From: Lepidodermella squamata
Taxonomy: Eukaryota; Animalia; Gastrotricha
Direction of reading: 5' to 3'
Length of the DNA stretch: 64,000 nt
NCBI GenBank assembly: GCA_047495785.1
Contig: JBLDXI010000024.1
Location: 4,216,001 to 4,280,000, forward strand
Shown: in pieces, positions 6,001-64,000 of the stretch
Layout: every line of letters begins with the position of its first letter
Numbering within the stretch: the stretch's first letter is position 1
Translations under genes and position numbers: made by a program
Notes under the pieces: model-generated
Databases searched by the model: none
Seen by the model: only the letters and a program-made list of their open reading frames with translations
What the model was told of the DNA's origin: nothing

Positions 6001-8734
6001 AAGGCTTTGAACCACCAGCCCCCGGTTCGATTTGCTATCACTTGAAAGGCTTGGCCGTTGTGTGACGATAGGGAATCCCCTGGAGCTTCAGGGTCGCTCA
6101 GCCAATTGTAGTTTGAAACGCTGAGCGTGTAGCTATTCGCAGAGCCAGATATGCTGAACGTCTTATATCGAGCTGTACGTCTAGCTCCGAAGACGTCTTC
6201 CATTACGATGGCCAACTCATAAGGATGGCTTGTAGAAGTCATCTTACTGATGACAGAGTTACCAAGATAGAAGCCAGTACTCATCGTGCCGAAACCTGTT
6301 TCATACGCAGCGTAATTCTGGTTGAAATCAGTGGTACCGCCTTGATAGTTCCGTTGGATAACTGTCCAACCTCCGCCATTGGCGCCCATTTCACAGTAAA
6401 CCTGCTTAGGATCAGAAGATTGACCGAGTAGGTATATTGTGTACACTCCAGTGGCTAAATTTGGCTTGTTGAATTGAAGATCAGCACAGTCGATGGGCCA
6501 AGCAATCTTCGGTGTTTTATCTATGAAGGGTGATTCAAATGTGAGATATTTTGACTTTCAGGTAGCTTACAAGGTACTCCGCTATATAGATCCGCTCGCC
6601 TGATCATTATTTGGGCGGTCTTCATCGACTCGCAGCAGCCTTTCCATGTTGGCCAGTTTACGCCCTGTGCGGAATTAGTGGTACCGTATATTCTGCGTAA
6701 ACGGAATAAACAAAAGGTCTAGTAAATAAGTGGGCAATCTGTTACCCATTGAAGTTTCCGGTACAAGCAGTGTTGTACCACCAGGCTGCCACATTAACAG
6801 AAGCGCAATTCGCAGCGTTTGCATCATTGTCTTTATCTTTCGCCGAGAACTTCCGGCCGTTACCTGCGGAGAACGAATCCTGCATATTTCCGCCAATGAA
6901 CGACCCAAGCGTTAGCGTATGATCCGCACTACTATCAGTGACTCTGAAACTGCTGTAGTAGGCCATGCCCATGAAGTCGTCGAAAGTTGTCGCTGTGAAT
7001 ACAAGTCGAAAAACGTTGAAAACACTCGTCAGAGCGCTTAGTGGCTGCAGGCCGAGCCAAAAGTTGGCTGATTTATTGCCGAAACCATTAGTGAAGCTGG
7101 TGAAAGTTTGATCGAAATTCTGGGCGTTGCTAACTCGCCGCTGGAAAACAGTCCAGCCGCCTCCGAATAGATCCATGTCACAATAGGTTGAAAACGGCGG
7201 TTTTGTTGGCGGGTTTATTGTGTAAACTCCACTGGGTGCATTCGGCTGGTTGAAAGCTAAATCCTCGCAATCCATAGGAGGCATGATCCATTTATCTAGT
7301 TGAGGAATTGGACCATATTCATCGTTTGCTATGGTTCAAAATTTGAACATACCGCAATGAGGCCATGGATCCGGTGACGTGAACGTTGAAAGGTCATTCG
7401 CGTAACCCATGGGACATTTACAGCCAGTGGGATCACAAGTCGTACAGCCAACGTGGCTTGGACATCCATATATAAGAAATCTCATCCTTGTTTCCGGCAT
7501 ACTCAAGCTGACACCGGTTGGATGAACCCTCAAACGCCTTGTTCTTACCACTGGGCAAAACATCGTGGGAACGAAATTTGTCGGGCTAGTAGATCCCGCG
7601 TTGCTGAACGATCTCGGTTGATTCGTTGAATCGTTCATGTTCGTGAGCACAGGGTAGAAGAACGAGCCTAGAGATTGTCTGGCCTGGAAGCTAACCTGAA
7701 AAGAAGTCAGGTAACCCTGCGCGCCTCCACCAGCTACTGTTAATCTGGAGATTGAAATGTCTCGATTGAAGTTGAATTCGATAAAAGGTGTCACGTCCCC
7801 AGCCGCTGGTTGCCAGTAATTCGAGGTGGCTAGATTCCCGTTGCCGTTAGCGGCTGTTCCTGTGGACGAAGTGATCGACCCTCCCCAAGTGCTGATCAGC
7901 GCAATAAGCTCAGAGTTACACCCAGCAACTATAATTCAATGACAAAGCTATAGAGAAGACGGCCATAACTAATTAACTTACACGTCCCGCAAGATGAACC
8001 AGACCATTCTGGAGTGCAGGTACAAACTCCCGGTGCGGTACAAGTCCCTCCGTTTTGACAAGCTGGTGCACATTTCGGATTTGCACAAGTCGGCCCTTCA
8101 TAGGTACCGGGACACTGACACGTATTGCCAACGAGACATGTACCGCCATTCTGGCAAGGAGGGGTACATATCGCTGTGAAGTCCAATATATAGGGTAAAG
8201 GTACGAAAATCCAGGGAAATTAGCTTACGCTGATTGCAGTATTTCCCAGTTACTCCAGCGGGGCAATCGCAGTAGCTTTTCGTAGCCTGTGTATTGCAAG
8301 TTCCTCCGTTTATGCAGATCGGGTAGTCAAGGGCATTGTAAGAGCAGAAAAAAGTGTCTTCGTTGGAAAAAAATTCAGAGAATTCCTGCGCAACCCTAGA
8401 AAATCGAGGCAACAATACCTGTTTGCTGGCATACTATGCCGGAATAATTGCCAGCGCAGAAACACAGGCCATTCGTGCACGTTCCGCCGTTGGAACAATC
8501 GACGTTCTGCGCACATCGCGAGGGCACCGCTGTGTCGCAAAAGGTTCCCATCCATCCTACTTGGCAATAACACTGATTGACCCCTGTGCAATTTCCATGC
8601 GAACACGCTGGATTGCACTCTACAAATAACCCGTTTATTAAATTTAAGTTTGTTATGAGCAAAGAAATATTACGTGCATCAGCAGCATCAAACATACTCA
8701 TAATCGAAATCAAAATTATTAGAAAATGGGTCAT
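1..8734 (-). CDS. Multi-exon receptor paralogue A, 3' end outside the window: signal peptide, EGFs, discoidin/FA58C-like, 4 FReD, PAN-like, 3 sushi, then about 21 tandem EGF exons; probably a polycystin-1-like gene like paralogue B
   Basis: ATG at 8734 (MTHFLIILISIMSMFDAADA). FReD motifs YCDM..GGGWTVFQRR, FWLGL and GGWW occur four times; sushi C..P/YxC/W..C patterns; about 100-nt phase-1 EGF exons separated by 50-60 nt GT-AG introns from 3177 to the window edge. Domain order and several intron positions match 10715-24028. The polycystin C-terminus is inferred, not seen. Confidence 0.85.
740..2867 (-). repeat. Higher-order tandem duplication of a 7-EGF-exon block (period about 1.09 kb)
   Basis: Exons in 740-1774 match exons in 1829-2867 one for one (e.g. 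ttgaacaatctgttcccttccaaccagcactgcaagtgcaagtgttc near 1211 and a near-identical copy near 2298). The exon at 2921-3023 resembles the 740/1829 exon. Confidence 0.85.
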
Positions 8735-10714: not shown

Positions 10715-13700
10715 TCAATCGAAATGAATGTCTTTCGAAACGTCATGCTGACTGAATCTCCTCATAAAATCGTAGTGAGCCCGGCTGTTATTTTGTTTCA
10801 AAGCTGGAATCAGTGGCTCAATAGAGGCTATTCTCTTCGGTCTCCGACTGCCAACTGCCGATCGCGCTTCTTTCAAATATTCCTCTGCCAATCTGATACT
10901 ACAAGTTGTTCGCTTATCTTCATTGAAAAGCGAAGACGCATTGACCAACGAATCGATATGCTTTGACAATCGCTCAATCGAGAGATGAACTAATTTCGAT
11001 TCATTTCAAAAGAGGAATACAGTCAATTCGAATGGAAAAACTTACGATTGGACTGGCCGTTAGGTTTGTCATTCCCCAGAGGGTCCAGGTCAGTTTTGGC
11101 TCCTTTTCCATAGGATACGAGCTTCTTCAGTTCTTCAGCCATGTAATCCGCGACTTCTTTATCCCAGTCGGTAGTCCCTTCAGCGTTGTCAGATATCTTA
11201 CCATAGGTTACAGTAATGATTGTCATAAATATTTGGACGGCTAAGAACATCACAATTGACGAATAAGCTACGCAGTAGACCATGATGAATCGAGACTCAG
11301 ATCCCAAGGCGATTAAGTTCCCTGTCACACCAATCACATTCTGAATGAGTGTCATCAGAGATGCAGTCATTGATCTGAACTCGCTCTGGCTTGCACCAAG
11401 GGTCAGGAATCCAAGACCCGCAAACATACTGGTAATCATTGTGAATATTGCGATGAAAGTAGCAATGTCATTTCTGCCCTTCGACAAAGTAGCCAAAAAG
11501 ATGCACCAGTGCTTGTTAAACTTGAAATGACGGAAGAACAATAACATTGTCATGAAAAATGTCAATCCGTAAAGATTTGCCATCGCCTCGTCCCAGATAA
11601 CAAGTAGATCAAGATTAGTGAATGATGTACGGTCTGTTTGCATTTTCGTGATTACTTTGATGATGGCCGATATGCGGACGCAGAAGAGGCCGACAATGCC
11701 GAAAGCAATCAGTATCGATATCAGCTCTAATGAATTCCAGCCGTCTTTCAAGTGCTGCACCGCCCCGTTTTTCTTCATGAGATAGGCAACCTTGATTGCT
11801 TCACTGATGAGTAAGATGATCCACAACCCTTGGATGACGTATACAGCGGCACTGCTGGCGCCGGAGTACTGATAGAGCTGCAAAGGGTACACTCGGGTGT
11901 GGTAGTTCATGCCCCCAGCTGGCATAGCTTCGAAAACCACTTTGACGCTTAAGAACAGGTTTATTTGGCTATTGTACAAGTTGAAATCGACGAAAAGCAC
12001 AGAAGTTGCGTTATCCAGCCATCTGCCTGCTTTCAGGTAAGCAACAAGCTGCTGGGCTTTCCACATTTTGGTAGGTAGATCGACGTAGTAGCCATCGCTT
12101 CTGTAAATGGCAGACCAACCATTATATGGGATTCCAGCAGGATCTTCTCGATAGAGCCAGGGAGCGTCGAATGATGAAATATTCGATTTGTCAATCGAAT
12201 AAGGCGGTAAATAGCCCCATCCAAACGAGAAGTCACGATTTTCGGAGTTTGAGCCGAAGCCATAATTGTTCGCATAAAAATCTTGACATGCAATGCCACC
12301 AAGATTTTCTGGATAGCCGTCAATTACGGAAATGGGACAAGGGCGACTAGTTACTCGCTGCTGCTTGAGTCGAATCGGCCCAACCAAGACCACATCATGA
12401 TTTGGCACTACATACATGTTTTTCATATTGAAAATTCCGCCGTAGTTCAACTGGTTTCCGTTCAGGAAATTAGGGATGACTTTCTGGCTGAGCCAGTCGA
12501 GAATACGCCCGTGATCAGTTATCGGCTCCAGGACTTGCTGTGCCCCATCGAATACAACTAGTGGTCTGATATCATCGACTAGAGTGTATCTATATGTGTT
12601 CTGCGTGGTCGCAATCACTAGCGCAAAGGTGATGACGTATGCGATTTGATGGGCTATTCCAGCCAGCGTGTTGCGCGTTCGTTTGAATACGGTCGTTTTC
12701 TGTGAAGTGTTGTCTGAAAGAGAATGAATTTCAGTAGATGAAGATTTATAAATGAAAGTTGAATACTTCTTGAGTACACCAGCTTTCCCATTGCCATGCC
12801 GTCATCCGGGAGTTTCAGTAGAGACGAAGTGAACATGGAGATCAGGAGAACTTTCACCGACTGGACAACAATTATGTCTTGGACTATGTTCATTCCCATG
12901 CTTGAAAGCCATTGCAGAGACTTCTCGCTCCCCCATTGAAGGCTATATAAGATGACAACGGAGACGGAAACAATAATCGAGATTGCAACCACTGAAAAAA
13001 TGATTTTCTGTATAATAAACAGCGCAGTGCAGCTGAACTCACATGCCCATGCAATCCCAACAGTCCAAAATGGCAGCTGTATGGGTTTCTTCTTTTTCTT
13101 CTTTTGATCTGTCTCCGCGGCATCGTCTGTGTCATCAGGTTCTTTCACTGCAGCATTAAAGATGGTGATCCAGTTGCTCTTCTCAGCAGAACGCCGCTTT
13201 ACTCTTTTAAAGATGAAAGCAATAGCTGCTGTAGGAGGGATGATGATCAAGCAACTGGCCAAACTTGTGTATAACGTAAACCACGAAATGCGAAAGAAGC
13301 CACCAATATTTATCCCTATTCTCGGTGCGGAGCTTTCTTGCCCATAAAACAGACAGTTAACCATCATGGCCATGAAAAGTGCCGACACAACACAGGACAG
13401 CCGTTCAACACGGGTCCAGTTGCTGGGCAGAGGCCTTCTTATAATTGAAAGCCAGGGATGGCTATCAGTAATGCCGAGTCGCGAATGACTGGATACGAGG
13501 TATTTGAAGCTTTTAATGACATCTTCTGTCGCCAGATCAGACTTGACTCTGTCGCCGGACTGCATCTTTTGCTGAACTGGAAAAATGTACTTTTTGCCAC
13601 CATTCACATCGACAATTACGACCTTGTCCATGAAGATCTGAAAAGGGTTGCTACCAATTTCCCAAGGCTTGCTTATCACGTCAAGTTCGATTGCATCGAT

Positions 13701-16700
13701 GAATTCTATAGGATAAACCGTGGTAAAGGTGAAATTGCCGGGTACTTTTCCAGCAAAGTTTTTTCTGAGACCATCATGCAATCTTCGAAAAGACGTTTCA
13801 CAGCCATCGCCTATAAGGCGGATGAACACTTGAGGTTCTAGCTCGTATCTTTTTACGCCATAGTAGTCAACAGATATTAGATACGTGAATTCATGGTGGA
13901 GTTTGTTACTTAGGATTGGCAAAAAGGCCCAGTTCTTCAAATCCTCCTTATCAGAAGTAAATGCGAACCAGATCGTAGCAAGGTATGCTACCACGCATAT
14001 CGTCATCAACGAGAAGACGGACGCATTCTCCGCCACTAGAGTGGTAAAATTGGCCAAAATCTCAGTTAGCTGTATCGTATTGGGCGAAATTAGGAGATCG
14101 GCTCCGAAATCCCCGAAATAGGAACTTTTAAATGAGACCTTAGATTCTGTGGAATCTGCCTCGAGATCAAAGTCTTCCTGTGAAGTTGAATTAGAGCTCA
14201 CATCACGTTTCAACCTCGATCCTAAAATTCGATCCTCAGAAGCGAAACCGATTCGCAAGTGGTAGCCATAACATCTTTGCATTTCACAAACTGAAGGTGG
14301 CAAATCGTCGTTCGGAGAATAGCGCGTGAGGTTTTTCTTAAGAAATGCGCTTAAAGTGAATGAATGGTTCGCATTAGACCCAATATTTTGTGGCGCCTTA
14401 TTATTGAATGCAATCAGAGCTGATCGAGGGATGATGACTCGAAGTTCAACATCTTGGATGAAATTCATTTTCAGAGGACCTAAGTTTGAATTCACACTAG
14501 CTGTCAAGCTATTCCCAGTAACATTGATAGACCAAGAGTTTCTACCGGCCGTTAGAGTAGCAGTAGCATTCAGGGATATAAAGACAGAGTAGTCGAACGG
14601 TATGGCTGGAATTATGAGGATGAAGTCTCCCGCGTCTACTGATATAGGGAATGTTGCGAGTGAACCCAACTTGTCTGCATTTGTTGAAATGTCGCATTTC
14701 ACCTTACTGATATCGCACTGCGACTCGACTTTTTCCGTCGAAAACTGCCTTGCCTTGCCCAACATTGGGTATCCAGTCATCCTGACTGGCCAGTTTTTGT
14801 TCAAGGCTAACTTGGTCGATCCAAAGAACAGGTATAACGATATCGTTGGCATATTGAACGGCTTATTTATGTCGAATACATTCGAAATATAAGCAGTTAA
14901 CACTACTGAAACTTTGCTTGATTCATCCAAACCCTGCGGCAAATCGATTAAGAGATCTCTCCAATTCTCAACTGAAGGAATTTCGGTAGCAGCTAAATTT
15001 GAGCTGATTCCCAATCCAGGAAGCTTTCCGGGTAAAGTGTTGCGAATTACAACAGCGAAGAAGGTTCCGTTGAAGCTGAAGTCTTTACCAATAGCGAGTG
15101 CACTTTTCACCATTGCGGCTGTGGACTCCATCATCGACCTGAAATCATCGAGCAACTTGTGCGTCTGAGCTGTTGTCATTTCGATTTTTGTCGGTTTCAC
15201 CACAAGTGACTCGGAATCGAACTTGTCGGCTTCACAACGAACTGCGGTGGTGGGCAAAATGATGGCCGGCGATTCAGGCTGAGGGATAAGTTCTTTCTCT
15301 AGTACTGTCGTTAACACTGAGCTCACAGATTCAGTGTATGCTGGTAAATTACAGTGAAAGTTGTTTAAACCGGACCGGTCTAAACCGGACTTTCTCCAAA
15401 CCGGACGATTTCGGGTGGCTCGATCCGAAAGTGTGGACTTTACATTATAATTTTATTGTCTAAACCGGACTCTCTAAACCGGACTGGTGTATAAACCGGA
15501 CGGATTTGGGGCTCGAAGTCCGGTTTATGCAATAAAAAGTCCAATTTTCTATATAATTTTGAAGGAAGTGCCAGCCCCTGCCTGACAAGAGTAGCCTCAA
15601 AATTTCGAAAAAATTTTAACTTCCAAATTATTGCGAATAAAGCTGAATATATTGATAATTTATATTAAAATTGTCGATTCCGTACTCAAAAACTATTACT
15701 TAGCTTGTAAAACTTGAAAATTCCATGAATTTCACGTGGTATTTCCTATACCGGACTCAGTCCGGTTTAAAATAATTCGGACTTTCTCTAAACCGGACGA
15801 TTTTGCCTGGCACGACCTTAGTCCGGTTTAGACAACTTTCACTGTACATTATTCTTAATGGGGCATTATAGGTACATCTCATTAACAACCTTGAGAAACC
15901 GATAGAATTGTTTCCGTCGAGAGATTCGCTGCCATTTTCTGGTATCGACTGAGCAGTTCGGCCGAAAGTGACATGAAATTTTGCTAGAGAAAGAGTAAAC
16001 AGCCTAAATCGGGGAAAATCATCAAATAATGTAAGCTACCGAATCGACGACCACATTCGCCGAGCTGGAGCTGCTTGAAATCACACTTGCGCTATCTTTC
16101 ACTTGCGAACTGATTGATGTTACGTTATCAGCAAGAGTTTGGTCAGGGAGTTTGGCCACAGCTGCAAGCTCCACAATTACCTGACTGGGTTTAGCGGTGG
16201 TTGATAGCTGGATAGATGAAGTTGTTAAAATTGATGTTGTTGTAAGAGCTGTTATGATAGAAATAGAAATGCTCAACAACTCGCCAGTGAAGGTTTTGTG
16301 GATTACAAATATTGCATGAATCGCCCGTCCAGAATGCTGTGCAGCTGCAGTTGTTCGCCGCGGAACACGTTCCCCCATTTTGGCAACCCCCAATTGATGT
16401 ACAGTCAGGTATTGATTTCGCGGTAGTTGATGGCTGGTTGGTTGAAGTTGTCACAATTGATGTTGTTGTGATCGCTGACATCGTACAAGTTAAAAATGTC
16501 CGTAAAAAAGAGGAAAAGAAATTACGTATATTGCATGCATCCCCAGTCCAGAATGCTGTGCAGCTGCATTTGTTTGATGCCGAACAGGTTCCCCCATTAA
16601 AGCAGCCCCCAATTAACGAACAGTCAGGCACCGAGCAGCTCGAGCTTGTCCAGCCTTGGTCGCAAACACAGTTATTTTTTGAAATGCAGAGACCATGACC

Positions 16701-19700
16701 GGAGCAATTTGCCACATCAAGGCAATTCGCTGTTAAAGTAACAGACGGATAAAACGCCAAACCATTGAAATGGAATTTAACCTAGTTCCGTGCAGTTAGA
16801 CCACGCTCGACAATCACCTGTGAAAGCAAACATTCACATCAGAAGCAAGGAGGATGATTCACGCAGTTTACCATAGCTGCAATTCGCGCCTGTCCAACCT
16901 ACAGCGCAGGTGCATTGATTCGGCGAAGAACAGGTTCCTCCATTCAAACACGCGCCCAAACCTGAGCAGTCCGGCACACACGTGCCGACTGAGCCCGACC
17001 ATTTCCTGGTTGTCATATTGCACCACAAATTCGCATAAGGAAGGTTGGTGTCGTTGAAAATATATCCAGGCAATGAGCAGTTATACTGCCAGACAGCGCC
17101 CCCGATGATTCGCTCATTCAGAGGAATCGGCAAGGGTATGGTAAAGTTGTTTGTGGTTCCAGCGAATGTTGGCGGCTGGGGGCAGCTAACATTTAGGCAA
17201 AGAGGTGTTGCGCCCTGCCAAGTCGTATTTGGAGGGGCGCAGGTTTGGGTCAAACTTCCGTTCACCAGAGATAGGCCCTGGTTGCATTGATAGAAAATCG
17301 TAACCACCTCGTTGCTGACTTCAAAATTCGGTAGTAGGAAGGCGTTTACAGCAGTGAAATTAGGTGCAAGACCGCAGGCTGCTCTACACCTCAACCACTG
17401 TCCCTGCCAATACTTGCTAGTCGTATTGCACGTGAGAACGGTCCACAGTTTGTTTGATGCGATGTTTGTGTAGTTAGGCAGACATGTATAATTTACAGAC
17501 ATAACACTTGGCATGCCTATGATTTCAAGCTCTGTCCACCCCATGGCTGGCGGAGGCCCGCATACACTGAACATGTCGCACTTATCCATCCTGAAGTAAC
17601 TATCGTACGAAGGGTCGCTTGTACCCATGCCGACATCACAAAACGTGTCACTCATATCGCAGGTTGATCCGGATATAGCAGCAACGTCGCAAGCGGCTAC
17701 ATTGCTGCAAGAATCGATGCATGCTTGGACAGAGCTGACCGTTTTCGATGTGACAGTGCCAGCCGAGCAGCGAAAGCCTCTCGCCCGCACGTGTCTACCT
17801 CGAGGGGGAAGTCTCTGCCGAATCTTGATCTCAGTCCATTGCAAGCTTTGCGGGCCGTATGTCTGAGCAAATATTCCACCAGAACCTGTTCCACTATACG
17901 GACCGTTCAGGTTCGAATAGCCCACAGTTGTTGTATTGCAAGTTTGTGGGAACCACCAACCTCCTGTGCCACATGGATCAGTTTGAAAGGTCTTCTTCTC
18001 AAGAACTAGCGTTCCACCAGTTGAACAGCTCTGAAATGAGCCTGCATAATTCGTCATTGAGTAAGCTGATCCGTATGGATAAAAAAGAGTAGCATATGAG
18101 AAAGCGTATCCTGCAGGACCTCGCATCTCAAATAAAACTTCAAAGCCAAAAGAATCGGTGATCTTTCGTAAGGCGTCTAGTCCCAGCCAGTAATTACCGG
18201 TGATCGAACCAAATCCCGATATATAGGTGTCGTAATCCTGGTTGAATGAAACAGTATCGTCGATTCTGCGCTGGAAAACCATCCATCCACCACCTTGTAA
18301 TACACAAAACCTCGTAGAATCTAGACACTTTCAAGTGGCAATATAGTTACCCCAGGTTTCTTGATCGCAGAACGCGGTTCCATTCCATGCGCCTGCCGAG
18401 AAATTATTATAAATTGCTGACACGAATTTTAAGTTAGCAGGCTGTTGTTGCTGGAAATATGTACAGTCCCTAGGTGTGCTCCAAGCTATAGAAATAGAGC
18501 TTAGGCCTATCAATATTATGCTTCAATACGAATACTTGTGATTGTGGGCTCCTCGTTAGAATACAGATATCCATAGTTGGCGAGTCTAATGCGCGAAAGT
18601 TCACCCGACAGCCATCGATATGGTGGGTCTACCATGTAGTTCACCACATCGTTGCCCGGAATTTGATTAGACAGGCCACTTAATGGTGGATATTTGCAGT
18701 ACATCCCATTCGACACTAAAGCATTGCAAAATTGAAAATTCATCGAGAAAAATTAAAGAACTCGCCTCGTCGGCGGACACCCATCATTGTAGTAGCCATC
18801 GAAGTGTTAAGCGGAGCGTAACCCGCGTATGCTACGGCTTTCAGATCTTTTGATGAGCCCCAAACGTTGTTCAAATTAATTTTGTACGCGCAGTTAGTGC
18901 GCATCCACCATCCACCTTCAAGCCTTGAAGCAGCCGGGCCGAAGCAAAGGGTCGCTGAACCGTTGTCAAAAGTCGAAAACGGCTGATAGTGATGAACATC
19001 GAATGCATTGACTAGGACAGTGAATAAGAATTTACTTTAAAATTTTCCTACCATTCTAAACTTTGGCCACTGTTTTATCTTAGCTTGCTTTCAAACTGCA
19101 CCACACTGCTTCATGCGTGTGTTGCGCAATCTATAATCTATAGCCACTCAATAAGCCTGCTTAATCCGCTGTTTTGACGATCGCCGCAGAAATTAGTCTT
19201 TTTTACGAGCAGAAATTATGATGATATTTTAGCTAAATTTAGGGCGCTCGCGTCAACATTTGATGAAAAAAGTAAGGTAACGACCATAGAAAGCAATAGA
19301 TAAAACATGCCGCCCAAAGGCTGTAATTACTGTCTTCTCTGCTAGCGCCTTAAACTCAAATAAAGGTTTTGACTGGAAATTATTCGGAGATCTATAATTT
19401 TTTAAGAAATAAGTGATGTAAAAGGAGTAGTATTTTACAAATTCGACGCTGTTTCATCGATGTTTTACCATTATATATATATATATATCACTATTTGGTG
19501 AATCGCACTACTAAATTGTTTCATACCGGTGTCATAGGCTCAATTCCGGGCCCCCCTTAGATACGAGCAGGCCCCAAGCGTCGGTTGCGCAATCAGAGGG
19601 TAAAATTGGACTTGTGCGCGCGCACTAAGTCGAAATTTTTGTTAATGTCGGGGCCGCGCGCGCTAATGTCAAAAGGCTAGTTAAAAAATGTTTGGCGGTT

Positions 19701-22700
19701 TTTATACCAAAATAAAGTTCACACAATACTCTATCAAATAGATATAGTTTCTCACGTTATAGGATTAAAGGAAAAAAGTTTTACGCGCACCCAAAGTTAC
19801 GAGTAGCGAGTGCGCGCGCTCTCACCCGGCGCGCAAAATCTAAGGTGCGCGTAAAACTTTTTTATTTTAAATAATTCGCGCGAGAACACCACATTCAATC
19901 GATAGAGAAGTGTCTGAATTATCTTTTGGTATAAAAACCGACGCGATATTTGAAAGTAAGCCTTTACGATCATCGCGCGCGGTATTAAGTTTGTTAGAAT
20001 TTAGGAATCAGAAAGTTTGGAGTGCGACTGATGCGCGCGAGCCAAGTCTAGATATTTAACCAACTTAATACCGCGCGCGATGATCTTATAGGCTTAATTT
20101 CAAATATCGCGTCGGTTTTTATACCAAAAAATAATTCAGACAGTTCTCTATCGATTGAATATGGTGTTCTCGCGCGAATTATTAAAAATAAAAAAGTTTT
20201 ACGCACGCTCTAACTTTCCATGCGTGCACGTGCGCGCCCCTAACCACCGCGCGGAATTTGAAGTGCGCGTAAAATTTTTTATTTTGAATTTCCCGACCGA
20301 GAACCTATATTTATTCGATAGCGAATTGTTTGAAATTTATTTTGATATAAAAACCGCCGGAATATTCAAAAGTCGCCCTTTGAAATAAGCGCGCGCGGCC
20401 TTAATTTTGTTAAAAATTTCGACTTAGCGCGCGCAACCGACGTTTGGGGCCTGCTCGTATCTAATGGGGGCCCGGAATTGAGCGTGTCATAGTAACAATA
20501 AATTGATCAATAAGCACGCAGGTCAAAGATTAACTTACTACTCAAAACACAACGTAGCGCAAAACACTGCAAAACACTTGGGACCATTGGATACATAGGA
20601 ACCAATCTTAACTACTGCGCCTCGTTTCCAAAAACACCTATAACACCCATGAAATGCGCAAAGTTTTTCAAATACACTGAGCAAATTCGTCTTCAGCAAA
20701 AAATTCGACGGAAAAATTGTGGCGCATTATTTTTGCAAAATTGTAGGGAAATTTTCGATACAGTTTTTTCAAGATGCTTGCTATGATAATCCTTGACCAC
20801 CTTTGTGGACTAATTCATGAAAGAGTTTGATTCGCTTTTCAAGAAATTATTTTTGATGCGCGTGCTTCGCCACGCCGCAACCACCAACGCGCGCGAGCGC
20901 GTTAAAGACAAGTGATTGTGCAGCTGTTTGCGCACGCACACGACCTGTATACTCGCGTTCGCTTACGAGAAGGACAACCTTATCCGTCGGCACTGAGAGG
21001 GTTTAGTAAGCTCGCTCACCGGGATTGTTAGACGCAAGGTCATAATTATTCGAATCGATGTATATTTTGTAACCAGTATCCTCCGATAGAATTCTGAAGT
21101 CTCGCCAGTGGCCAACATTTGTTTCACCGTTAATCGGATCGGTTGTTATTGTGAAGAAATCCAAACACGTCCGACGCCCAAGTTGATAGATGTATTCAAG
21201 CCCTGTGAAATGCCATCGTAACAGGATTAAAAGGAAAATAGCGCATCAGCTAAGAAGGGGAAAATACTGGGGGTGCCCAAAAACGTATCTAATTCCACAA
21301 TCACTCGTGATGCGAGATACGAGAATATGTAACCTCCGCAAGATTCACATACCTAACCAATAGTCGCTTGATTCATTGAAAGGTTGCGCAGAAAAACCCC
21401 ATTTGTAGTCTTGCCAGCCTCTGGAAAAATTCACGTTTCCGTTAGTTCTCTTTTGAATCATCTACGCGAAGAAATTGTAAACGTGTTGTTGCTTATTCGG
21501 AGTAGGAAATACCGTGATTCCGCGATAGTCGGTCGTATTCGAGATGTAGGGCAATTTATCGAAGAGGCAATAAACTCTCAGTGGCTGCATTCCTATTGGG
21601 TAAATCCAGTAAACGCCATTTGTGGAGCTGTTGTCAATCGTGAATATGTCGTAGCAATCATATGGCTTTTGAACAAGCGGCTTTATCATCATCACACTAC
21701 TTTTTATCGAGTTGACCTTGCCCTTCCAAGACGACCATACGATGCCTTGTTCAAACGCATCATTCATTGGAACACCATTCAAGTTTGAATCGAGGCAGGA
21801 ACCGGATACCCAGTCCTTGAACCACCATGCCCCCGACCTGTTCGAATAAACACGAAATTCTTGCCCATTATGGGTCGACAGGGAATCTCCAGGTGTTTCG
21901 GTGTCATTCATCCAATTGTAGCCAGAAGCGTTCAATCTATAGTTCGTGCTGGAGTCACCGATGAAAAACCTCCGATACCTCGCAGTTCGAAAATTCCCGT
22001 TGGTGTATTCGAGTGTGACTGCTAGTTGGTAAATCGGCCCAGCGGCTGTAATTTGGTTAATTGCGGTGTTGCCAAGGTAGAAAGCCAAGTTCTGATCGCC
22101 AAAGCCGCTCTCATATGCAGCGAAACTTTGATTAAAGTTTTGGTTAGCTGCGGGATAATTCCTTTGAATAATCGTCCAGCCACCGCCGAGAGCCGACATT
22201 TCGCAATAGGCTTTAACCGCGCTCCCACCAGGCGGATAAATTGTATAAACTCCACTTGGTGCATGAGGCGAGTTGACAGCAATATCAGAACAGTCCACCG
22301 GGTTCGGGTAAGACATCGCGACACCTGGAATAATCTGTTTGCGAAGTACGAGGATTTAATCGGAGCACAAACCTGGCGTTCCGTAGAAATCATTAGGCTG
22401 CCGCCTCACCATCATCTGAATGTTCTTAATAGACTCAGATGCAGGCCGAAAGGAATCCCAATTTACTCCCTGGTAGGGTGTAGTTGAATTGTAAACTCTG
22501 GGTGGATATGGCTGACTGTAAGCGTGTCTCAATCGACTAAAATTAACCTACCCATTGAGACTTGATGCCTGGCAAGTGTTTCCGTACCACCAACCACCCA
22601 TGTTCGTCGCTGCGCAATTTGAGCCAGTGACCTTATCGTTGTCTTGATCGGCGGTACTGAATTGACTACCTAGTGCTGTGATCATCGGGTTTGCCCCCAT

Positions 22701-24028
22701 ATTGCCGATACCCGTCTGGAGGTAGGAAAGCGTGTAATTACTTGACGTGCTTATCGTTCTAAAGCCTTTCCAAATTCGGAAACCGTTGAGATTGTTCTCC
22801 AAATCAGCAATGTATATAGCCATTTGATAGTAGTTATACGCCGGGGATACTACAGAATGAAGGTTGTGCAAACCCAGCCAGAAACTATCGCTGAATGAGC
22901 CGAACCCGGATACGTAATCGGTCCACGGCCGATTGAAATCGACGGAAGCCGAAGATCGCCGCTGAAATACCGTCCAGCCGCCACCGAGTGCCTTCATATC
23001 ACAATATACTTTTCGAGTGGCTGTTCCAAAAGTGTTGATGGTGTAAGTTCCACTGGGAGCCGATGGCTGCCTCATTGCAATATCCTCACAATCGAGCGGT
23101 GGTATTGTCAATTGATCTGATAAATTAATTTCGTTCATAGATTAAGCGATCTTTCTGACTAACTCAATTAGGTAATACATACCGCAATGAGGCCATGGGT
23201 TAAGAGTCGGATCTTTACTAGAGTAACCAATCGGACATTGGCAACCAGCTTCTGAACACACAGTGCAACCAGCATGAGCCAAGCAGCCGTCCACCAGAAA
23301 CCTAATTCGCATCGCTGTAATAGACGTCGAACTGTTCCTCGGATGGATGCGCAATTTCTGCGTCCTAATAACAGGGCACAGAACGATCGGGGAGAAATAG
23401 GTCGTCGAAGAGCCATTTAGCGATGTGTTGAAGAGCACGGGAGTGCTCCTTGAATCTTGCTGATCAGTCAATACTGGCAAGAACAACTCGCCCATGCCGG
23501 TCTTCGCGAGAAAAGATAAAACAAATGAAGTCAAATAGCCGAAACCTATTTCCCCAGCAGCAGTTCTTATCGTGCGAACAGAGACCTCCCTGCCAAAGTT
23601 CAAATCCAAGTATATGTTGATTTCACTTCCCAAAGGTCGCCAAAAAGATCCTGGTGGCAGATTTCCGTTTGCATTTGCAGCAGTTCCAGATGAAGCAGTT
23701 ATTGATCCACCCCACTCAGCAATCTTAGATATCAGCTCAATATTTTGGCATGCCGTTGCTATTTCATTAACGATGTTCATAGATATATAATCCATAGTAT
23801 TACTTTTTAACTAACATTGATTGCAAGTTGGCCCAGTCCAATCATCCACACATGTGCACGTGTCTGGAGCCGTGCAGCTGCCACCGTTAAGACAAGGATT
23901 TGAACAGGACTCTGCTTACGTAAAATATGAAATGTATGCGGAATTTTCCCGTAATGGAACGAACGTGCGGTAACTTTTTGCTGCAAGGTGAAGATTGAAA
24001 TGTGTAGAAAACATATAAAAAGCCGCAT
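10715..24028 (-). CDS. Paralogue B: apparently intact polycystin-1-like (PKD1L-type) receptor-channel with EGF/discoidin/4xFReD/PAN/3xsushi/EGF ectodomain
   Basis: Manual splicing from ATG 24028 (MRLFICFLHISIFTLQQKVTA) to TGA 10715 keeps one frame through all ORF pieces. PKD1L hallmarks: PNTI..TM1..D..D, PLAT-like YLISV..VFIRLIG, HPWLSI..RP..SNWTRVERLSC, WG.EKS.QWL, GPIRLKQQRV, Y...GYYVDL, RWLDNATSVLFVDFNLYN..INLF, S1-S6 and a C-terminal coiled coil (IERLSKHIDSLVN). Confidence 0.88.
15352..15844. mobile_element. Non-autonomous Tc1/mariner/pogo-type MITE in an intron of paralogue B
   Basis: TIRs CAGTGAAAGTTGT(T/C)TAAACCGGAC at both ends, flanked by TA; repeated subterminal TAAACCGGAC motifs; no ORF. 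Confidence 0.9.
19538..20483. mobile_element. Fold-back/MULE-like non-autonomous DNA element with 9-bp TSD, in an intron of paralogue B
   Basis: TIR GCTCAATTCCGGGCCCCC..TAGATACGAGCAGGCCCCAA; TSD GTGTCATAG at 19529-19537 and 20484-20492; internal inverted repeats. Confidence 0.85.
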
Positions 24029-24697
24029 CAGGAAGCCACTAGATTATGAGATGGTTCCGAAAATCGATTTCGGCAGTAAGTTATCTGTTTCTTCAAAAAA
24101 ATCGTGATAATGCTTAACTGCCTTCAAAAACGCCTAAAATACTTATGAGGTCTCAGTTATCCTAAATCCAAGTGGAACAACTAAGCTATTGGCCATTTAT
24201 TGGAAAACGGTCAAAGAAAGTGCCTACGTGTTGGGAAACCCCTAACACGTAACCTTAAAACTGCAAAAAATTAAGTTATCATTTAGCAACAGGCAGCAAC
24301 ATTGATTCCGCCCCTTCCGCCAGTTTGAAATAAATCGATCGCTTGCAGGTTTTGTTGACTGCCAAGTTCAATAATTAGTTACCTATCCGCAGGGCATATC
24401 GTCTATAACAATGAAAATACCCAACCAGCAAATTTGTTATTAGCCATTGCGTATCTATTGTATAATTGATGTTACAGCTTTTTGCAACGCTTTTTTGGGA
24501 GAATCGATGCTTGCCATTCTTAGCTCTTTTGTTTAGATTTTTATCAATCAATAAGACAGAATGACCCCGGTGTGGTGCGCTTTCCGGTTCAACACTTTCA
24601 AGGTTTGCGCATTCATGATGTCGCACATGGTTCGCTCGAAGACGGGATGAATGTAGGTAGAAATGCCAAACCCACAGTTTGTTCGATAAGCGATAGG
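22129..24697. repeat. Segmental duplication shared with 61447-64000 (5' end and upstream region of paralogues B and C)
   Basis: Mostly near-identical at 22732-24697 vs 62051-64000 including upstream non-coding DNA; more diverged at 22129-22730 vs 61447-62050. Confidence 0.92.
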
Positions 24698-56900: not shown

Positions 56901-59900
56901 GCGAGTTCTTTGAACATCATCTCTCCACTTTTCATGGGCGACTTGGTCAAGAAAACAAACTTTTGCGCCTTCTCAATGTCGACGATGACAACTTTGTCTA
57001 CGTGCATCTGAAGGGGCTTCATGCCATGCAGCGACCTAAATCGGCTGTGCAGTCGAATTTCAATCGCCTCGATGTGACCAATTGGCAGAGTTGTGGTCAT
57101 CATGAAATTAGCTGGTCTTCTACCTTTGAAATTCGCTTCTCTCTCACAATCTTCTAGAACTCGCCAGTTTGTATCACTGATATCACCGTAAGCTCGGAGT
57201 AGGACCACAGGCTTCAGATGGTAATTTTTAACGCCGAAGTGATCAACGGAAATAAGGTATCTGTGTCTTTCGTAAGGCTTGTTGCTCTTCAAAGGCACAA
57301 ATGCCCACTCTTTGATGTCGAGTTTGTCAAACCGCCAAACTATTATCGCTCCAATAATGAAGAAAAGCGTAGCGGCGACTATAAACGCGAGAACGAAGTT
57401 GTTATCCGATACAAGCGTCGCAAAATTGGCGAAGATATCAGAGAATTCGATGGTGTTGGGTGAGATGACGAGATCAGCCCCGAAATCGCCAAAGTAAGAT
57501 GATTTGAAACTAACTGCAGATTCAGTCGAACTTGGATCAAGTTCGAAATCATCATCAGAGCTCGTTTGTGATGCATCGCGTCTTTTCCTTGACTTTGTGT
57601 TTTGCGCCTTGGCGAATCATACTTTGAGATGATAGCCGTAGCATCGTTGTAGTTCGCAAGCATCTGATGGCAAGTCGTCGATTGTTGAGAAACTGGAAAA
57701 ATCTTTCTTCGTATAAACGTGCATCTTGAATGAGACATTTCCTTTTGAGGAGACCCCTTGAATCCTAACAAATTCCTGCAATGCTGATTGTGGAATCACT
57801 ATTCGCAGTTCGGCATCTATATTGTAGCTTGACATGAGTTCGCCGAGGCTGGCATTTACACTAGTGCTGACACTGGTTTGACTGACATTGACAGACCAGG
57901 TATAGCGTTTTACTGTGGGAGTGCTGTTGTATATGCCGTGTAGTTGTACTTGATGACCGGGAATATGAGCACATAATATCCGGAATCCGGAGAAACAGGG
58001 AATATGGCTAGCGATCCCAATGTATCCGCATTGGTGCTGACATCACATGTTATCTTGCTCACATCGCACTGAAAGTCAGACTTTTGCATGATAAACATAG
58101 CTGCCTTGGAGACAACAGGCTTCCCAGTAATTCTTATCGGATAACCTTTCTTGAGGACAAGCTCTCTCTTCTGATAGAGAACCTTGACAGAAATTGTTGG
58201 CATGTTGAACGGCTGCTTTGGGTCCAGGACGTTAACGATGTAGGCGGTTACTAGCACGGTGACTGTATCAGAATCTCCAATTGACAACCCCGAAGTCTGG
58301 GGATCTATGAATTCAACGGCAGATGTGGCGCTGGGGAAAACCACAGTTGCATGGACTGTATCGAGCCTCAAGTTCGCCAGCCTCTTGGCATCAATGACCA
58401 ATAGAGCCACAGAGAAAAATTTGCCATTGAATGTAAAGTTTTTGCTCGTTTTAAGATTCTCCTCAACCATCTTTAGCATGGTGTCAATGATTTTATTGAA
58501 ATCCCCGTAATGCGTAGACACCTGCAAAAGGTGTCTACGCATTACGGGTGAATTAGGTGGCATACAACTTGAATATAACAAACATGATCATTTGAAAGCG
58601 CAGAATTACTACTCGTCGATGCGGTCGTTTCTGGGTCAGTCCGGCAATTATCGTTTTGACCAGCAAGGTCGAACGGAGGCGAGGTTGATTCATACACTGC
58701 GAACATGGCAGAACTTGCTGCCGAAGCGTATGCCACTGTGATATTGGCAACAACCTCTGGGGCCATCTGACTCGCTAGATCAGCGTACTTCGCCACGGCG
58801 GAAGTCATATCAGCCATGAATGCAGTTGTCGACGGAGCTAAAGCTGGTGCGCTTTCAGCCAAACTTAAGCGGGATGCCGCCTCGATGACTACAGCGGTTA
58901 TGGGACTAACAGCCGCTATCAAAGTCTGGGGCAGCATGTTTGCTATGAATGAAATCGAAATCGCCGGCGGTGGAACATCTTCGTTCATTTTCTCTGAACA
59001 ATCTTTTCCGGTCCAGTATTTAGTGCAGGTGCAAATGTTGGGTTGCGCACATGTTCCTCCATTCTTACAACCACCCAAACTTGAGCATGATGCTATTTTC
59101 GAGAAATTATTTGAGATGCAGAATATAAAGTTCTGAATCTTACGAAAGACACAATTTGAATAGGTCCAGCCCGAACCGCAGTTGCATACATCGACATCAA
59201 TGCAGGTTCCACCGTTGTAGCAGGAACCCAAGTTCGAGCAGTTAGCATTCATCGATATCTGACATGCTATTCCACGCCATTGGCTCGGGCAGGTGCAGTT
59301 ATTAGGCGCCGAGCAATTGCCGCCATTTAAACAGCCTCCAATGGATGAACAATCGGCTAGGAATAGAAAAAAACAGTTATTTCGAATTTCGACTGTGACC
59401 TTCACAGTAATTTTCAAAGACTATTAGCTTATGAAGTTGGATTGTTCAAGCATTGAAACTTGGTGGTATTACCTATCAAATCATGCAACTTCATAATCAA
59501 TTTAAATTAATTGAAGCAATTTAACCTTGATCGCAAATAGAACCTCGCCAGCCACTTTTACACGAGCAAGTGTTCGGCGCAACACACGATCCACCATTGG
59601 TACAGGCTGGCGAACACACAGCCGCAATAGCCGTTGTTACAAGAATGTTACCACTGGAGGCTAAGTTAAAAAGATATTGCGACTTACGCGTGCTGCAGTC
59701 AGACCCAGTCCAACCCGCTGCACAAGTGCAAATGTTCGGAGCTGTGCAAGAACCTCCATTCAAGCAAACAGGAGAGCAGATAGCTGAAAAATCCATGGGG
59801 TTACATTAGCGAAGTAAATATAGCCTTTATTCATACTGGTTGAACAATTGGAGCCAGTCCAGCCCGCTGCACACGTGCAAATGTTAGGACTAGAGCACGT

Positions 59901-62900: not shown

Positions 62901-63350
62901 CAGAGACCTCCCTGCCAAAGTTCAAATCCAAGTATATGTTGATTTCACTTCCCAAAGGTCGCCAAAAAGATCCTGGTGGCAGATTTCCGTTTGCATTTGC
63001 AGCAGTTCCGGATGAAGCAGTTATTGATCCACACCACTCAGCAATCTTAGATATCAGCTCAATATTTTGGCATGCCGTCGCTATTTCATTAACGATGTTC
63101 ATAGATATATAATCCATAGCATTACTTTTTAACTAACATTGATTGCATGTTGGCCCAGTCCAATCATCCACGCATGTGCATGTCTCTGGAGCCGTGCAGC
63201 TGCCACCGTTGAGACAAGGATTTGAACAGGACTCTGCTTACGTAAAATATGAAATGTATGCGGAATTTTCCCGTGATGGAACGAACGTGCGGTAACTTTT
63301 TGCTGCAGGGTGAAGATTGAAATGAGCAGAAAACATACAAAAAGCCGCAT
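53955..63350 (-). pseudogene. Paralogue C: mosaic polycystin-1-like pseudogene
   Basis: Same PKD1L motifs as paralogue B. Lesions: 4-nt insertion near 62673, large internal deletion near 61447, frameshifts near 57930, 56510, 55535 and 54725, and TGA at 57617-57619 where B has Gly. Confidence 0.88.
58504..58548. repeat. Perfect 20-bp inverted repeat with 5-nt loop spanning a putative 3' splice site
   Basis: cccgtaatgcgtagacacct-gcaaa-aggtgtctacgcattacggg. Confidence 0.95.
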
Positions 63351-64000
63351 CAGGAAGCCACTAGATGGTTCCAAAAAATCGATTTCGACAGTAAGTTATC
63401 TGTTTCTTCGAAAAATCGCGATAATGCTTAACTGCCTTCAAAAACGCCTAAAATATTTATGAGGTCTCAGTTATCCTAAATCCAAGTGGAACAACTAAGC
63501 TATTGGCCATTTATTGGAAAACGGTCAAAGAAAGTGCCTACGTGTTGGGAAACCCCTAACACGTAACCTTAAAACTGCAAAAAATTAAGTTATCATTTAG
63601 CAACAGGCAGCAACATTGATTCCGCCCCTTCCGCCAGTTTGAAATAAATCGATCGCTTGCAGGTTTTGTTGACTGCCAAGTTCAATAATTAGTTACTTAT
63701 CCGCAGGGCATATCGTCTATAACAATGAAAATACCCAACCAGCAAATTTGTTATTAGCCATTGCGTATCTATTGTATAATTGATGTTACAGCTTTTTGCA
63801 ACGCTTTTTTGGGAGAATCGATGCTTGCCATTCTTAGCTCTTTTGTTTAGATTTTTATCAATCAATAAGACAGAATGACCCCGGTGTGGTGCGCTTTCCG
63901 GTTCAACACTTTCAAGGTTTGCGCATTCATGATGTCGCACAAAGACGGGATGAAAGTAGGTAGAAATGCCAAACCCACAGTTTTTTCGATAAGCGATAGG

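What the first reader, a model, noticed from the sequence alone, without database searches (positions are those of the whole stretch)
14103..14216. GPS autoproteolysis site apparently replaced by a furin site
Seen: where PKD1L proteins have C..W..W..GC..CxCxHL|T(F)FG...PNxI before TM1, both B and C read VSFKSSYFGDFGADL(L/V)ISPNTI, lacking His, the Thr/Ser nucleophile and the GPS Cys/Trp residues. About 27 residues upstream both carry a furin consensus plus acidic linker: RLKR|DV in B (14205-14216) and RKRR|DA in C (57578-57589), conserved despite divergent flanks. Inference: cleavage has moved from self-catalysis to a proprotein convertase, leaving a conserved tethered peptide that could act as a stalk agonist.
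Basis: partly seen in the sequence, partly recalled or inferred. Interest (0 to 1): 0.82.

Follow-up and report, generated by a model that had tools for sequence, protein, structure and literature searches.

The report
Dead self-cleaving site, furin-type site instead
A polycystin-1-like receptor gene of a small invertebrate keeps the fold of its self-cutting juxtamembrane (GAIN) domain but has lost every self-cutting residue. It carries instead a conserved furin-type RLKR motif in a floppy loop of that domain, so an outside protease may now do the cutting, though no cleavage has been shown.

Summary
On the minus strand, 14216-14205 encodes RLKR. Thirty-one residues downstream, the position where polycystin-1 relatives read CxCxHL|T reads SSYF|G, followed by a conserved stalk (DFGADLLISPNTI) and TM1.

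- **Homology:** HMMER aligns this stalk with the human PC1 stalk. 81 more distant relatives keep H[LMF][ST] at that position.
- **Conservation:** the basic motif is kept in all four database relatives of the clade and in copy C, although the surrounding loop is only 17% identical.
- **Wider pattern:** among 103 relatives with at least 100 residues upstream, Rx[KR]R lies within 120 residues upstream of the stalk in 12 of 29 GPS-less proteins and 0 of 74 canonical ones. The tree allows only three independent GPS changes, so this is not a phylogenetically sound test. One of the three, a crinoid protein, has RRKR inserted exactly between the last two strands.

Cleavage, continued association of the fragments and any agonist role are all untested. 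Copy C looks like a decaying gene. The scan has already noted this feature on several other windows of this genome, and one follow-up reached the same reading. I class it as a new variant of a known kind, the GAIN counterpart of the autoproteolysis/furin interchange documented for SEA domains.

The parts
11023..24028 (-). Gene B, a polycystin-1-like receptor-channel. Domain order: signal-peptide-like start, fibrinogen-C domains, EGF repeats, GAIN-like domain, TM1, PLAT-like region, TM bundle, polycystin domain, PKD channel.
   Evidence: ORFs and Pfam hits; PC1 match 6a70_B at E 1.2e-10; hydrophobic N-terminus MRLFICFLHISIFTL.
14085..15176 (-). GAIN-like domain (residues 51-414 of the 890-aa ORF), with no Pfam hit.
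14244..14270 (-). Beta-strand YGYHLRIGF, the last ordered strand before the loop.
   Evidence: DSSP on the model, strand 314-322; GY and L invariant in the clade.
14139..14243 (-). 35-residue loop (ORF residues 362-396). By MAFFT alignment and strand spacing it occupies the place of the Cys/Trp-bearing strands of the GPS motif.
   Evidence: The equivalence of strands is inferred, not superposed.
14184..14228 (-). ILGSRLKRDVSSNST, the only stretch of the model with pLDDT below 50.
   Evidence: (model 328-342), mapped to the window.
14205..14216 (-). RLKR, a furin/proprotein-convertase consensus R-X-K-R, followed by D-V and an acidic, Ser-rich linker.
   Evidence: A basic cluster sits in the same columns in P0001, P0002, P0003 and P0014. 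It is the only Rx[KR]R in B's ectodomain ORFs.
14124..14138 (-). Strand VSFKS, equivalent to GAIN strand 12 (the CxCxHL strand of canonical relatives).
14112..14120 (-). Y-F-G at the position of H-L-T: the general base, the P1 Leu and the nucleophile are all replaced.
   Evidence: Alignment to PC1 and to 81 canonical relatives.
14073..14111 (-). Stalk / last GAIN strand DFGADLLISPNTI, homologous to the PC1 stalk AFGASLFVPPSHV.
   Evidence: strand 367-373.
13929..14024 (-). TM1 helix.
   Evidence: Model helix 396-427; aligned to PC1 TM1.
13557..13919 (-). PLAT-like region. It aligns to the PC1 region that follows TM1, where the PLAT domain is taken to lie, but is below Pfam detection.
   Evidence: alignment; no Pfam PLAT hit.
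12714..12766 (-). 53-nt GT..AG intron joining the 890-aa and 531-aa ORFs.
   Evidence: The spliced frame matches copy C's sequence.
11200..12522 (-). Polycystin domain and PKD cation-channel domain.
   Evidence: Pfam PF20519 at 6.6e-29 and PF08016 at 1.9e-19.
57578..57589 (-). RKRR in paralogue C, followed by D-A and an acidic linker.
57617..57619 (-). In-frame TGA in paralogue C, ten codons upstream of its RKRR.
   Evidence: Together with the frame changes, it suggests C is decaying.

Best explanation
Gene B encodes an 11-TM polycystin-1-like receptor-channel subunit whose juxtamembrane GAIN domain can no longer cut itself. H-L-T has become Y-F-G, and the GPS cysteines and tryptophans are gone.

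The part of the GPS motif that carried those residues has been replaced by a 35-residue loop. The centre of that loop is predicted disordered and carries RLKR followed by an acidic linker.

The most likely mechanism is that a furin/kexin-type proprotein convertase cuts after R374 as the protein passes through the late secretory pathway. The C-terminal fragment would then begin at DVSSNSTS... and would still contribute the last two strands of the GAIN sandwich (VSFKS and DFGADLL). The two fragments would therefore stay together non-covalently, as in GPS-cleaved polycystin-1, or in furin-cleaved Notch and GPR126 SEA domains.

Shown by computation: the dead GPS, the retained GAIN fold, the position of the motif in a flexible loop, and its conservation. 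Inferred: the cleavage itself, fragment association, and any tethered-agonist role of the stalk.
For: - **Dead GPS:**
- **Flexible loop:** RLKR lies in the only pLDDT<50 stretch, while the flanking segments score 90 and 95.
- **Conservation:** basic clusters sit in the same columns in B, P0001, P0002, P0003 and P0014 (RLKR, RRKRR, RKRR, RRKKR, KRRRR). These proteins are 27-44% identical to B over this region, and the rest of the loop is 17% identical.
- **Real ORFs:** the relatives are uninterrupted ORFs from three different metagenome assemblies.
- **Topology:** signal-peptide-like N-terminus and extracellular domain types.
- **Enrichment:** Rx[KR]R occurs within 120 residues upstream of the stalk in 12 of 29 GPS-less relatives and 0 of 74 canonical ones. 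Background is 0.036-0.07 per 120 residues.
- **Independent case:** the crinoid protein P0130 sits inside the canonical clade. It has a degenerate CFCLLV|S and a 28-residue low-confidence insert with RRKR between strands 12 and 13.
- **Precedent:** SEA domains are cut in one and the same loop either by autoproteolysis or by furin (PMC6954182).
Against: - There is no protein or RNA evidence. The only public run holding this DNA is not on record as RNA and is kept as contigs.
- Seventeen of the 29 GPS-less relatives lack a strict Rx[KR]R. Several have only RR or RRR, and some have nothing.
- The motif sits in different loops in different subgroups.
- The tree needs only three GPS-state changes, so the co-occurrence cannot be tested with phylogenetic independence (sign test p 0.5-1).
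- Many adhesion-GPCR GAIN domains work uncleaved, for example BAI2 (8oek, the second-best match), so a dead GPS need not be compensated.
- An NST sequon five residues after the site could hinder a protease.
- The model's loop disorder is a prediction from a shallow clade-specific alignment.
Confidence: 0.55

Rival explanations
1. The GAIN domain is simply uncleaved, as in several adhesion GPCRs. On this view the conserved basic cluster has a non-proteolytic role. It could bind sulfated glycans or matrix, or pair electrostatically with the acidic stretch that follows it.
For: Uncleaved GAIN domains are well documented, and the uncleaved BAI2 structure 8oek is the second-best structural match. 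The basic cluster is always followed by an acidic run. About half of the GPS-less relatives have no strict furin consensus.
Against: What is conserved is specifically the R-X-K/R-R pattern with P1 Arg, not merely positive charge. It lies in a disordered loop rather than on a structured surface. Canonical, self-cleaving relatives have none in 74 sequences. The crinoid case places RRKR exactly at the old cleavage turn.
Confidence: 0.25
2. A convertase does cut at RLKR, but the purpose is to shed or release the ectodomain, or to remove it during maturation. No stable two-fragment receptor with a tethered agonist results.
For: Same sequence evidence as the best explanation. After cleavage, two strands and the packed linker hold the fragments together, and the GPS disulfides are absent.
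Against: The segment from the acidic linker to strand 13 is modelled with pLDDT 71-95 as an integral part of the sandwich. This argues for retention, as in cleaved GAIN and SEA domains.
Confidence: 0.12
3. The motif has no function. It is a neutral remnant or a compositional accident in a fast-evolving, Arg/Lys-richer loop of a decaying domain in an expanding gene family that includes pseudogenes such as C.
For: GPS-less juxtamembrane regions are richer in Lys+Arg (10.9% against 7.0%). Copy C carries a stop and frameshifts. The family is large.
Against: The motif is retained in the same columns across five sequences at 27-44% identity to B, while the rest of the loop is 17% identical. The relatives are long intact ORFs. 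The background rate is 0.036-0.07 per 120 residues.
Confidence: 0.06

Closest known systems
Polycystin-1 / PKD1-like proteins with an autoproteolytic GAIN-GPS (human PC1, C. elegans LOV-1, sea-urchin REJ3)
   Same: The 11-TM architecture, with a GAIN fold directly before TM1. The stalk is homologous (DFGADLLISPNTI against AFGASLFVPPSHV). A PLAT-like region, polycystin domain and PKD channel follow.
   Different: H-L-T is Y-F-G. There are no GPS cysteines or tryptophans and no Pfam GPS, REJ or PLAT hit. A disordered loop with RLKR replaces the Cys/Trp strands.
Cleavage-resistant GAIN domains of adhesion GPCRs (e.g. ADGRB2/BAI2 8oek, CELSR1 8vy2)
   Different: Those receptors keep the five-strand GPS motif and its disulfides. 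I found no convertase site reported inside their GAIN subdomain B. The BAI2 furin site lies far away, between the CUB and TSP domains.
SEA domains cut in one loop either by autoproteolysis (Mucin-1, GPR110, GPR116) or by furin (Notch S1, human GPR126)
   Same: A juxtamembrane or ectodomain fold whose fragments stay associated after a cut in a surface loop. Self-cleavage and furin cleavage are interchangeable during evolution (PMC6954182).
   Different: The fold is different: alpha/beta SEA rather than GAIN. For SEA domains the cleavage has been shown experimentally; here it is only predicted.
GPS-less 'FKSNFF|G' polycystin-1-like proteins of Lingula, Haliotis, Ylistrum and Mytilus (P0005-P0007, P0056, P0090, P0096 and others)
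   Same: The same replacement of CxCxHL|T by F-K-S-N-F-F|G-type sequence. About half carry RxKR or RRRR within 30-90 residues upstream.
   Different: They keep the W..W hairpin, and the basic sites sit in other loops. They share only about 15-19% identity with B in the ectodomain.

Membership tests
Polycystin-1-like (PKD1L/PKDREJ) 11-TM family | C-terminal polycystin domain plus PKD cation-channel domain | tested here: met
   PF20519 at 6.6e-29 and PF08016 at 1.9e-19.
Polycystin-1-like (PKD1L/PKDREJ) 11-TM family | Stalk-TM1-PLAT-TM2-5 region homologous to PC1 | tested here: met
   phmmer against 6a70_B gives E 1.2e-10 over query residues 384-712; 1224 library relatives.
Polycystin-1-like (PKD1L/PKDREJ) 11-TM family | PLAT/LH2 domain after TM1 | tested here: inconclusive
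   No Pfam PLAT hit, but the region aligns with the PC1 sequence that follows TM1, where the PLAT domain is taken to lie. It was not folded separately.
Polycystin-1-like (PKD1L/PKDREJ) 11-TM family | REJ domain upstream of the GPS | tested here: not met
   No PF02010 hit in any ORF of gene B.
Autoproteolytic GAIN domain | GAIN fold (helical subdomain A plus beta-sandwich subdomain B ending in the stalk strand) | tested here: met
   [not shown]
Autoproteolytic GAIN domain | H-L-S/T catalytic triad at the strand 12/13 turn | tested here: not met
   Y-F-G at the aligned position.
Autoproteolytic GAIN domain | GPS motif with its conserved Cys and Trp residues (Pfam PF01825) | tested here: not met
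   No hit at E<=1, while the controls P0010, P0018 and P0123 score above the cut-off.
Furin / proprotein-convertase substrate | R-X-K/R-R motif with a permissive P1' residue | tested here: met
   RLKR|DV in B, RKRR|DA in C, and equivalent motifs in four relatives.
Furin / proprotein-convertase substrate | Site exposed in a flexible loop | tested here: met
   It is the only pLDDT<50 segment of the model. This is a prediction.
Furin / proprotein-convertase substrate | Lumenal/extracellular topology | tested here: met
   N-terminal to TM1 and homologous to the extracellular PC1 stalk. Signal-peptide-like start and EGF/fibrinogen domains. Inferred from homology.
Furin / proprotein-convertase substrate | Actual convertase-dependent cleavage | not testable with these tools
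   No RNA or protein data are available.
SEA-domain furin/autoproteolysis interchange (Notch S1, GPR126) | SEA alpha/beta fold | tested here: not met
   The fold is GAIN. The resemblance is in mechanism only.

The most novel reading that the evidence does not exclude
A whole lineage of polycystin-1-like receptors has handed GAIN-domain cleavage over from self-catalysis to proprotein convertases. The lineage comprises this animal's expanded family, its metagenomic relatives and part of the lophotrochozoan 'FKSNFF|G' subfamily, with an independent case in a crinoid PKDREJ-like protein. This would be the GAIN counterpart of the SEA-domain autoproteolysis/furin interchange. It would show that the cut itself, and not the chemistry that makes it, is what selection preserves in these receptors.
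Probability: 0.3. Interest if true: 0.8.

Novelty: new variant of a known kind. Interest (0 to 1): 0.6.

Why it matters
Whether GPS cleavage of polycystin-1 and adhesion GPCRs is needed for its own sake is a long-running question. It could matter for two-fragment architecture, force-dependent dissociation or exposure of a tethered agonist, or it could be a dispensable by-product of the fold.

A natural lineage that lost the self-cleaving chemistry yet keeps a convertase site in the same domain would argue that the cut itself is selected. A convergent crinoid case would strengthen that argument. Such a lineage would also offer a GAIN domain whose cleavage can be switched on and off with protease inhibitors or a three-residue mutation, without disturbing the fold.

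Tried and rejected
- **Word-index protein search.** Searching ORF residues 150-640 found nothing, because full-length relatives are longer than the length window. The exhaustive representative search was needed.
- **JGI metagenome scan.** A scan with the clade alignment found no further relatives.
- **RNA evidence.** The only run holding this DNA is not on record as RNA and is kept as contigs. Laying it on copy C showed many paralogous unitigs. It could not confirm or correct C's stop codon or frameshifts.
- **CYGYHL as the real GPS.** I considered that CYGYHL upstream of RLKR is the degenerate CxCxHL. I rejected this because HMMER and 81 canonical relatives place HL|T at YF|G, and the model has a further strand (VSFKS) between the two.
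- **A 30-nt intron in C.** I considered that the TGA in C lies in a 30-nt GT..AG intron (57622-57593), which would keep the frame. The one verified intron here is 53 nt, and C has other frame breaks, so a pseudogene is more likely. This remains unresolved.
- **Strand equivalence.** I could not decide whether YGYHLRIGF corresponds to the strand before the GPS motif or to its first strand.
- **Phylogenetic test.** The phylogenetically corrected test of co-occurrence has no power, with only three contrasts.
- **Organism.** It was not identified. Earlier notes of the scan call it an unidentified small invertebrate.

Full report
**Observation.** The finding lies on the minus strand, inside an 890-codon open frame (12654-15326). 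Bases 14216-14205 read AGG TTG AAA CGT, which is RLKR. The sequence continues with DVSSNSTSQEDFDLEADSTESKVSFKSSYFGDFGADLLISPNTIQL and then a hydrophobic helix. In the second copy, C, bases 57589-57578 read RKRR, followed by DASQTSSDDDFELDPSSTESAVSFKSSYFGDFGADLVISPNTI.

**What the gene is.** The next open frame downstream (11023-12618) carries a polycystin domain and a PKD cation-channel domain. It is joined to the 890-codon frame by a 53-nt GT..AG intron (12714-12766). Upstream frames carry EGF repeats and fibrinogen-C domains. The frame at 24028 starts with a signal-peptide-like hydrophobic stretch.
- The 890-residue piece has no Pfam hit at all.
- phmmer matches it to the human polycystin-1 C-terminal fragment (6a70_B, E 1.2e-10). 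That alignment puts FGADLLISPNTI on the PC1 stalk AFGASLFVPPSHV and then runs on through TM1 and the following TM helices.
- B is therefore an 11-TM polycystin-1-like protein with an unusual ectodomain.

**The GPS is dead.** An exhaustive HMMER search found 1224 relatives, and I worked with the best 150.
- I anchored 110 of the 150 on the stalk. Of these, 81 read H[LMF][ST] at the cleavage position, typically CxCNHL|TSFGxDFFVPPNTIDF. B reads SSYF|GDFGADLLISPNTI.
- The general base, the P1 leucine, the nucleophile, the two cysteines of the strand and the upstream C..W..W..C are all absent.
- Pfam's GPS model scores above its cut-off on three canonical relatives. It gives nothing on B, on its closest relative, or on the molluscan and brachiopod GPS-less proteins, even at E<=1.

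**The fold is still GAIN.** I built an alignment of 63 sequences (A1) and ran AlphaFold2 on ORF residues 40-470. The result has mean pLDDT 87.5 and pTM 0.80.
- *Second structure search.* A search of 48,161 representatives that does not depend on Foldseek gives the same picture. It adds three axonemal proteins with a GAIN-like fold.
- *Coverage.* The matches run from the N-terminal helix to the last strand, DFGADLL (model 367-373).

**Where the basic motif sits.** The only stretch of the model with pLDDT below 50 is model 328-342, ILGSRLKRDVSSNST (window 14184-14228).
- It lies in a 35-residue connection between strand YGYHLRIGF and strand VSFKS.
- The segments on either side are confident, at about 90 before and 95 for STESKVSFKS. 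The acidic linker and the last two strands are thus modelled as part of the sandwich.
- By MAFFT alignment and by strand spacing against a canonical-type model, the loop takes the place of the Cys/Trp-bearing strands of the GPS motif. I could not superpose coordinates, so that equivalence is an inference.

**Conservation.** Only four cluster representatives share B's ectodomain: P0001, P0002, P0003 and P0014.
- They are unnamed proteins from three different ENA metagenome assemblies. All are encoded by long uninterrupted ORFs, up to 1632 codons.
- All carry a basic cluster in the same alignment columns: RRKRR, RKRR, RRKKR and KRRRR. In each case an acidic run follows, then S-T/S-E and the dead GPS.
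- Outside those four columns the loop is 17% identical between pairs. Outside the loop the figure is 40%.
- The background frequency of Rx[KR]R in this family is 0.036-0.07 per 120 residues. RLKR is the only such motif in B's extracellular frames.
- Chance retention is very unlikely.

**Copy C is weak evidence.** C has an in-frame TGA ten codons before its RKRR, and frame changes near 57925, 56500 and 54722 with no room for introns. The single public run holding this DNA could not settle whether these are real.

**The wider family.** A second, larger set of GPS-less relatives reads VxFKSNFF|GSF. It includes RefSeq models from Lingula, Haliotis, Ylistrum and Mytilus.
- *Raw count.* Among relatives with at least 100 residues upstream, Rx[KR]R occurs within 120 residues upstream of the stalk in 12 of 29 GPS-less proteins and in 0 of 74 canonical ones. 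The raw Fisher p is 3e-8.
- *Phylogenetic limit.* A maximum-likelihood tree built on the 310 residues after the stalk needs only three changes of GPS state. The contrast is therefore not phylogenetically independent, and the paired test has no power.
- *Variable position.* The motif sits in different loops in different subgroups, and 17 GPS-less proteins lack the strict consensus.
- *Independent loss.* One of the three changes is informative. A crinoid PKDREJ-like protein (P0130) is nested among canonical sequences. It reads TQCFCLLV|S and then has a 28-residue insert containing RRKR and an acidic run, directly before its stalk. In its model (pLDDT 80) the insert is a low-confidence connection between strands 12 and 13. 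It is a single gene model, and I could not check it against transcripts.

**Mechanism.** The best-supported reading is that a furin/kexin-type convertase cuts after R374 in the secretory pathway.
- The membrane fragment would start at DVSS and would still supply the last two GAIN strands, so the ectodomain would stay attached non-covalently.
- P1' Asp with a small P2' residue is compatible with known convertase substrates, such as proalbumin (RR|DA). That comparison is from my own knowledge.
- What this works like is documented for another fold. SEA domains are cut in one and the same loop by autoproteolysis in Mucin-1, GPR110 and GPR116, and by furin in Notch and human GPR126 (PMC6954182).
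- In three literature searches I found no report of a convertase site substituting for the GPS inside a GAIN domain. The BAI2 furin site lies far from its GAIN domain.
- Cleavage, association of the fragments and any agonist function of the stalk remain untested.
- The stalk is conserved in cleaved and uncleaved relatives alike. Its conservation therefore says nothing specific about agonism.

**Rivals.**
- The domain may simply be uncleaved, like BAI2 or CELSR1, with the basic cluster serving in binding or in charge pairing with the acidic run.
- Cleavage may serve to shed the ectodomain.
- The motif may be neutral.
The first rival is the serious one, because half of the GPS-less relatives do without a strict site.

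**Earlier notes of this scan.** The same feature has been noted on at least seven other windows of this genome, with RRRR, RKKR and RTKR variants. One follow-up (s1-374079) reached the same reading on another paralogue. Those are unchecked notes, and I did not use them as evidence. The high summed depth of near-identical unitigs over copy C agrees with a large family.

**Limits.** The organism was not identified.

**Verdict.** This is a new variant of a known kind, of moderate to good interest, and it can be tested directly with a simple cleavage assay.

Noticed in passing
window 54092-63415 (-), gene C: Copy C looks like a decaying gene. It has an in-frame TGA at 57619-57617 and frame changes near 57925, 56500 and 54722 with no room for introns. 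It also has an internal tandem duplication: 55491-55724 repeats the sequence at about 55200-55428.
   Followed up: partly
window 22129-24100 vs 61447-63415: The 5' two kilobases of genes B and C, introns included, are 90% identical in DNA. Their GAIN/TM parts are about 67% identical or undetectable by blastn. The genes are mosaics, through gene conversion or recent reshuffling of the N-terminal modules.
   Followed up: partly
window 54000-59500, run X1: Hundreds of short unitigs that are 90-99% alike lie on copy C. Their summed depth reaches about 2600, against about 55 for exact-match contigs. This suggests dozens of close paralogues in the genome.
   Followed up: no
P0005-P0007, P0011, P0012, P0016, P0056, P0090, P0096 (Lingula, Haliotis, Ylistrum, Mytilus): There is a lophotrochozoan polycystin-1-like subfamily with FKSNFF|G in place of CxCNHL|T. 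It keeps the W..W hairpin. Some members have RxKR or RRRR, and others have a conserved S-R-R-L-L motif at one loop position.
   Followed up: partly
P0130 residues 1787-1830 (Anneissia PKDREJ-like, XP_033100141.1): This is an independent GPS loss within the canonical clade. CFCLLV|S is followed by a 28-residue insert with RRKR, directly before the stalk. It could be a gene-model artefact and was not checked against transcripts.
   Followed up: partly
[not shown]
   Followed up: no
window 13191-13202 (-), ORF residues 708-711: A second Rx[KR]R (RVKR, within FKRVKRRS) lies just after a TM helix. The corresponding PC1 region suggests it is cytoplasmic, so it is not a convertase target.
   Followed up: no
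window 3081-6446 (-): The ectodomain frames of a third polycystin-like gene (fibrinogen-C, Sushi, EGF) are present. Its GAIN/TM part lies before the start of the window.
   Followed up: no
L001, L002 (ENA metagenome contigs): The closest relatives are encoded as single uninterrupted ORFs of 1584-1632 codons on metagenome contigs. B, by contrast, has at least one 53-nt intron. The source organisms are unknown.
   Followed up: no
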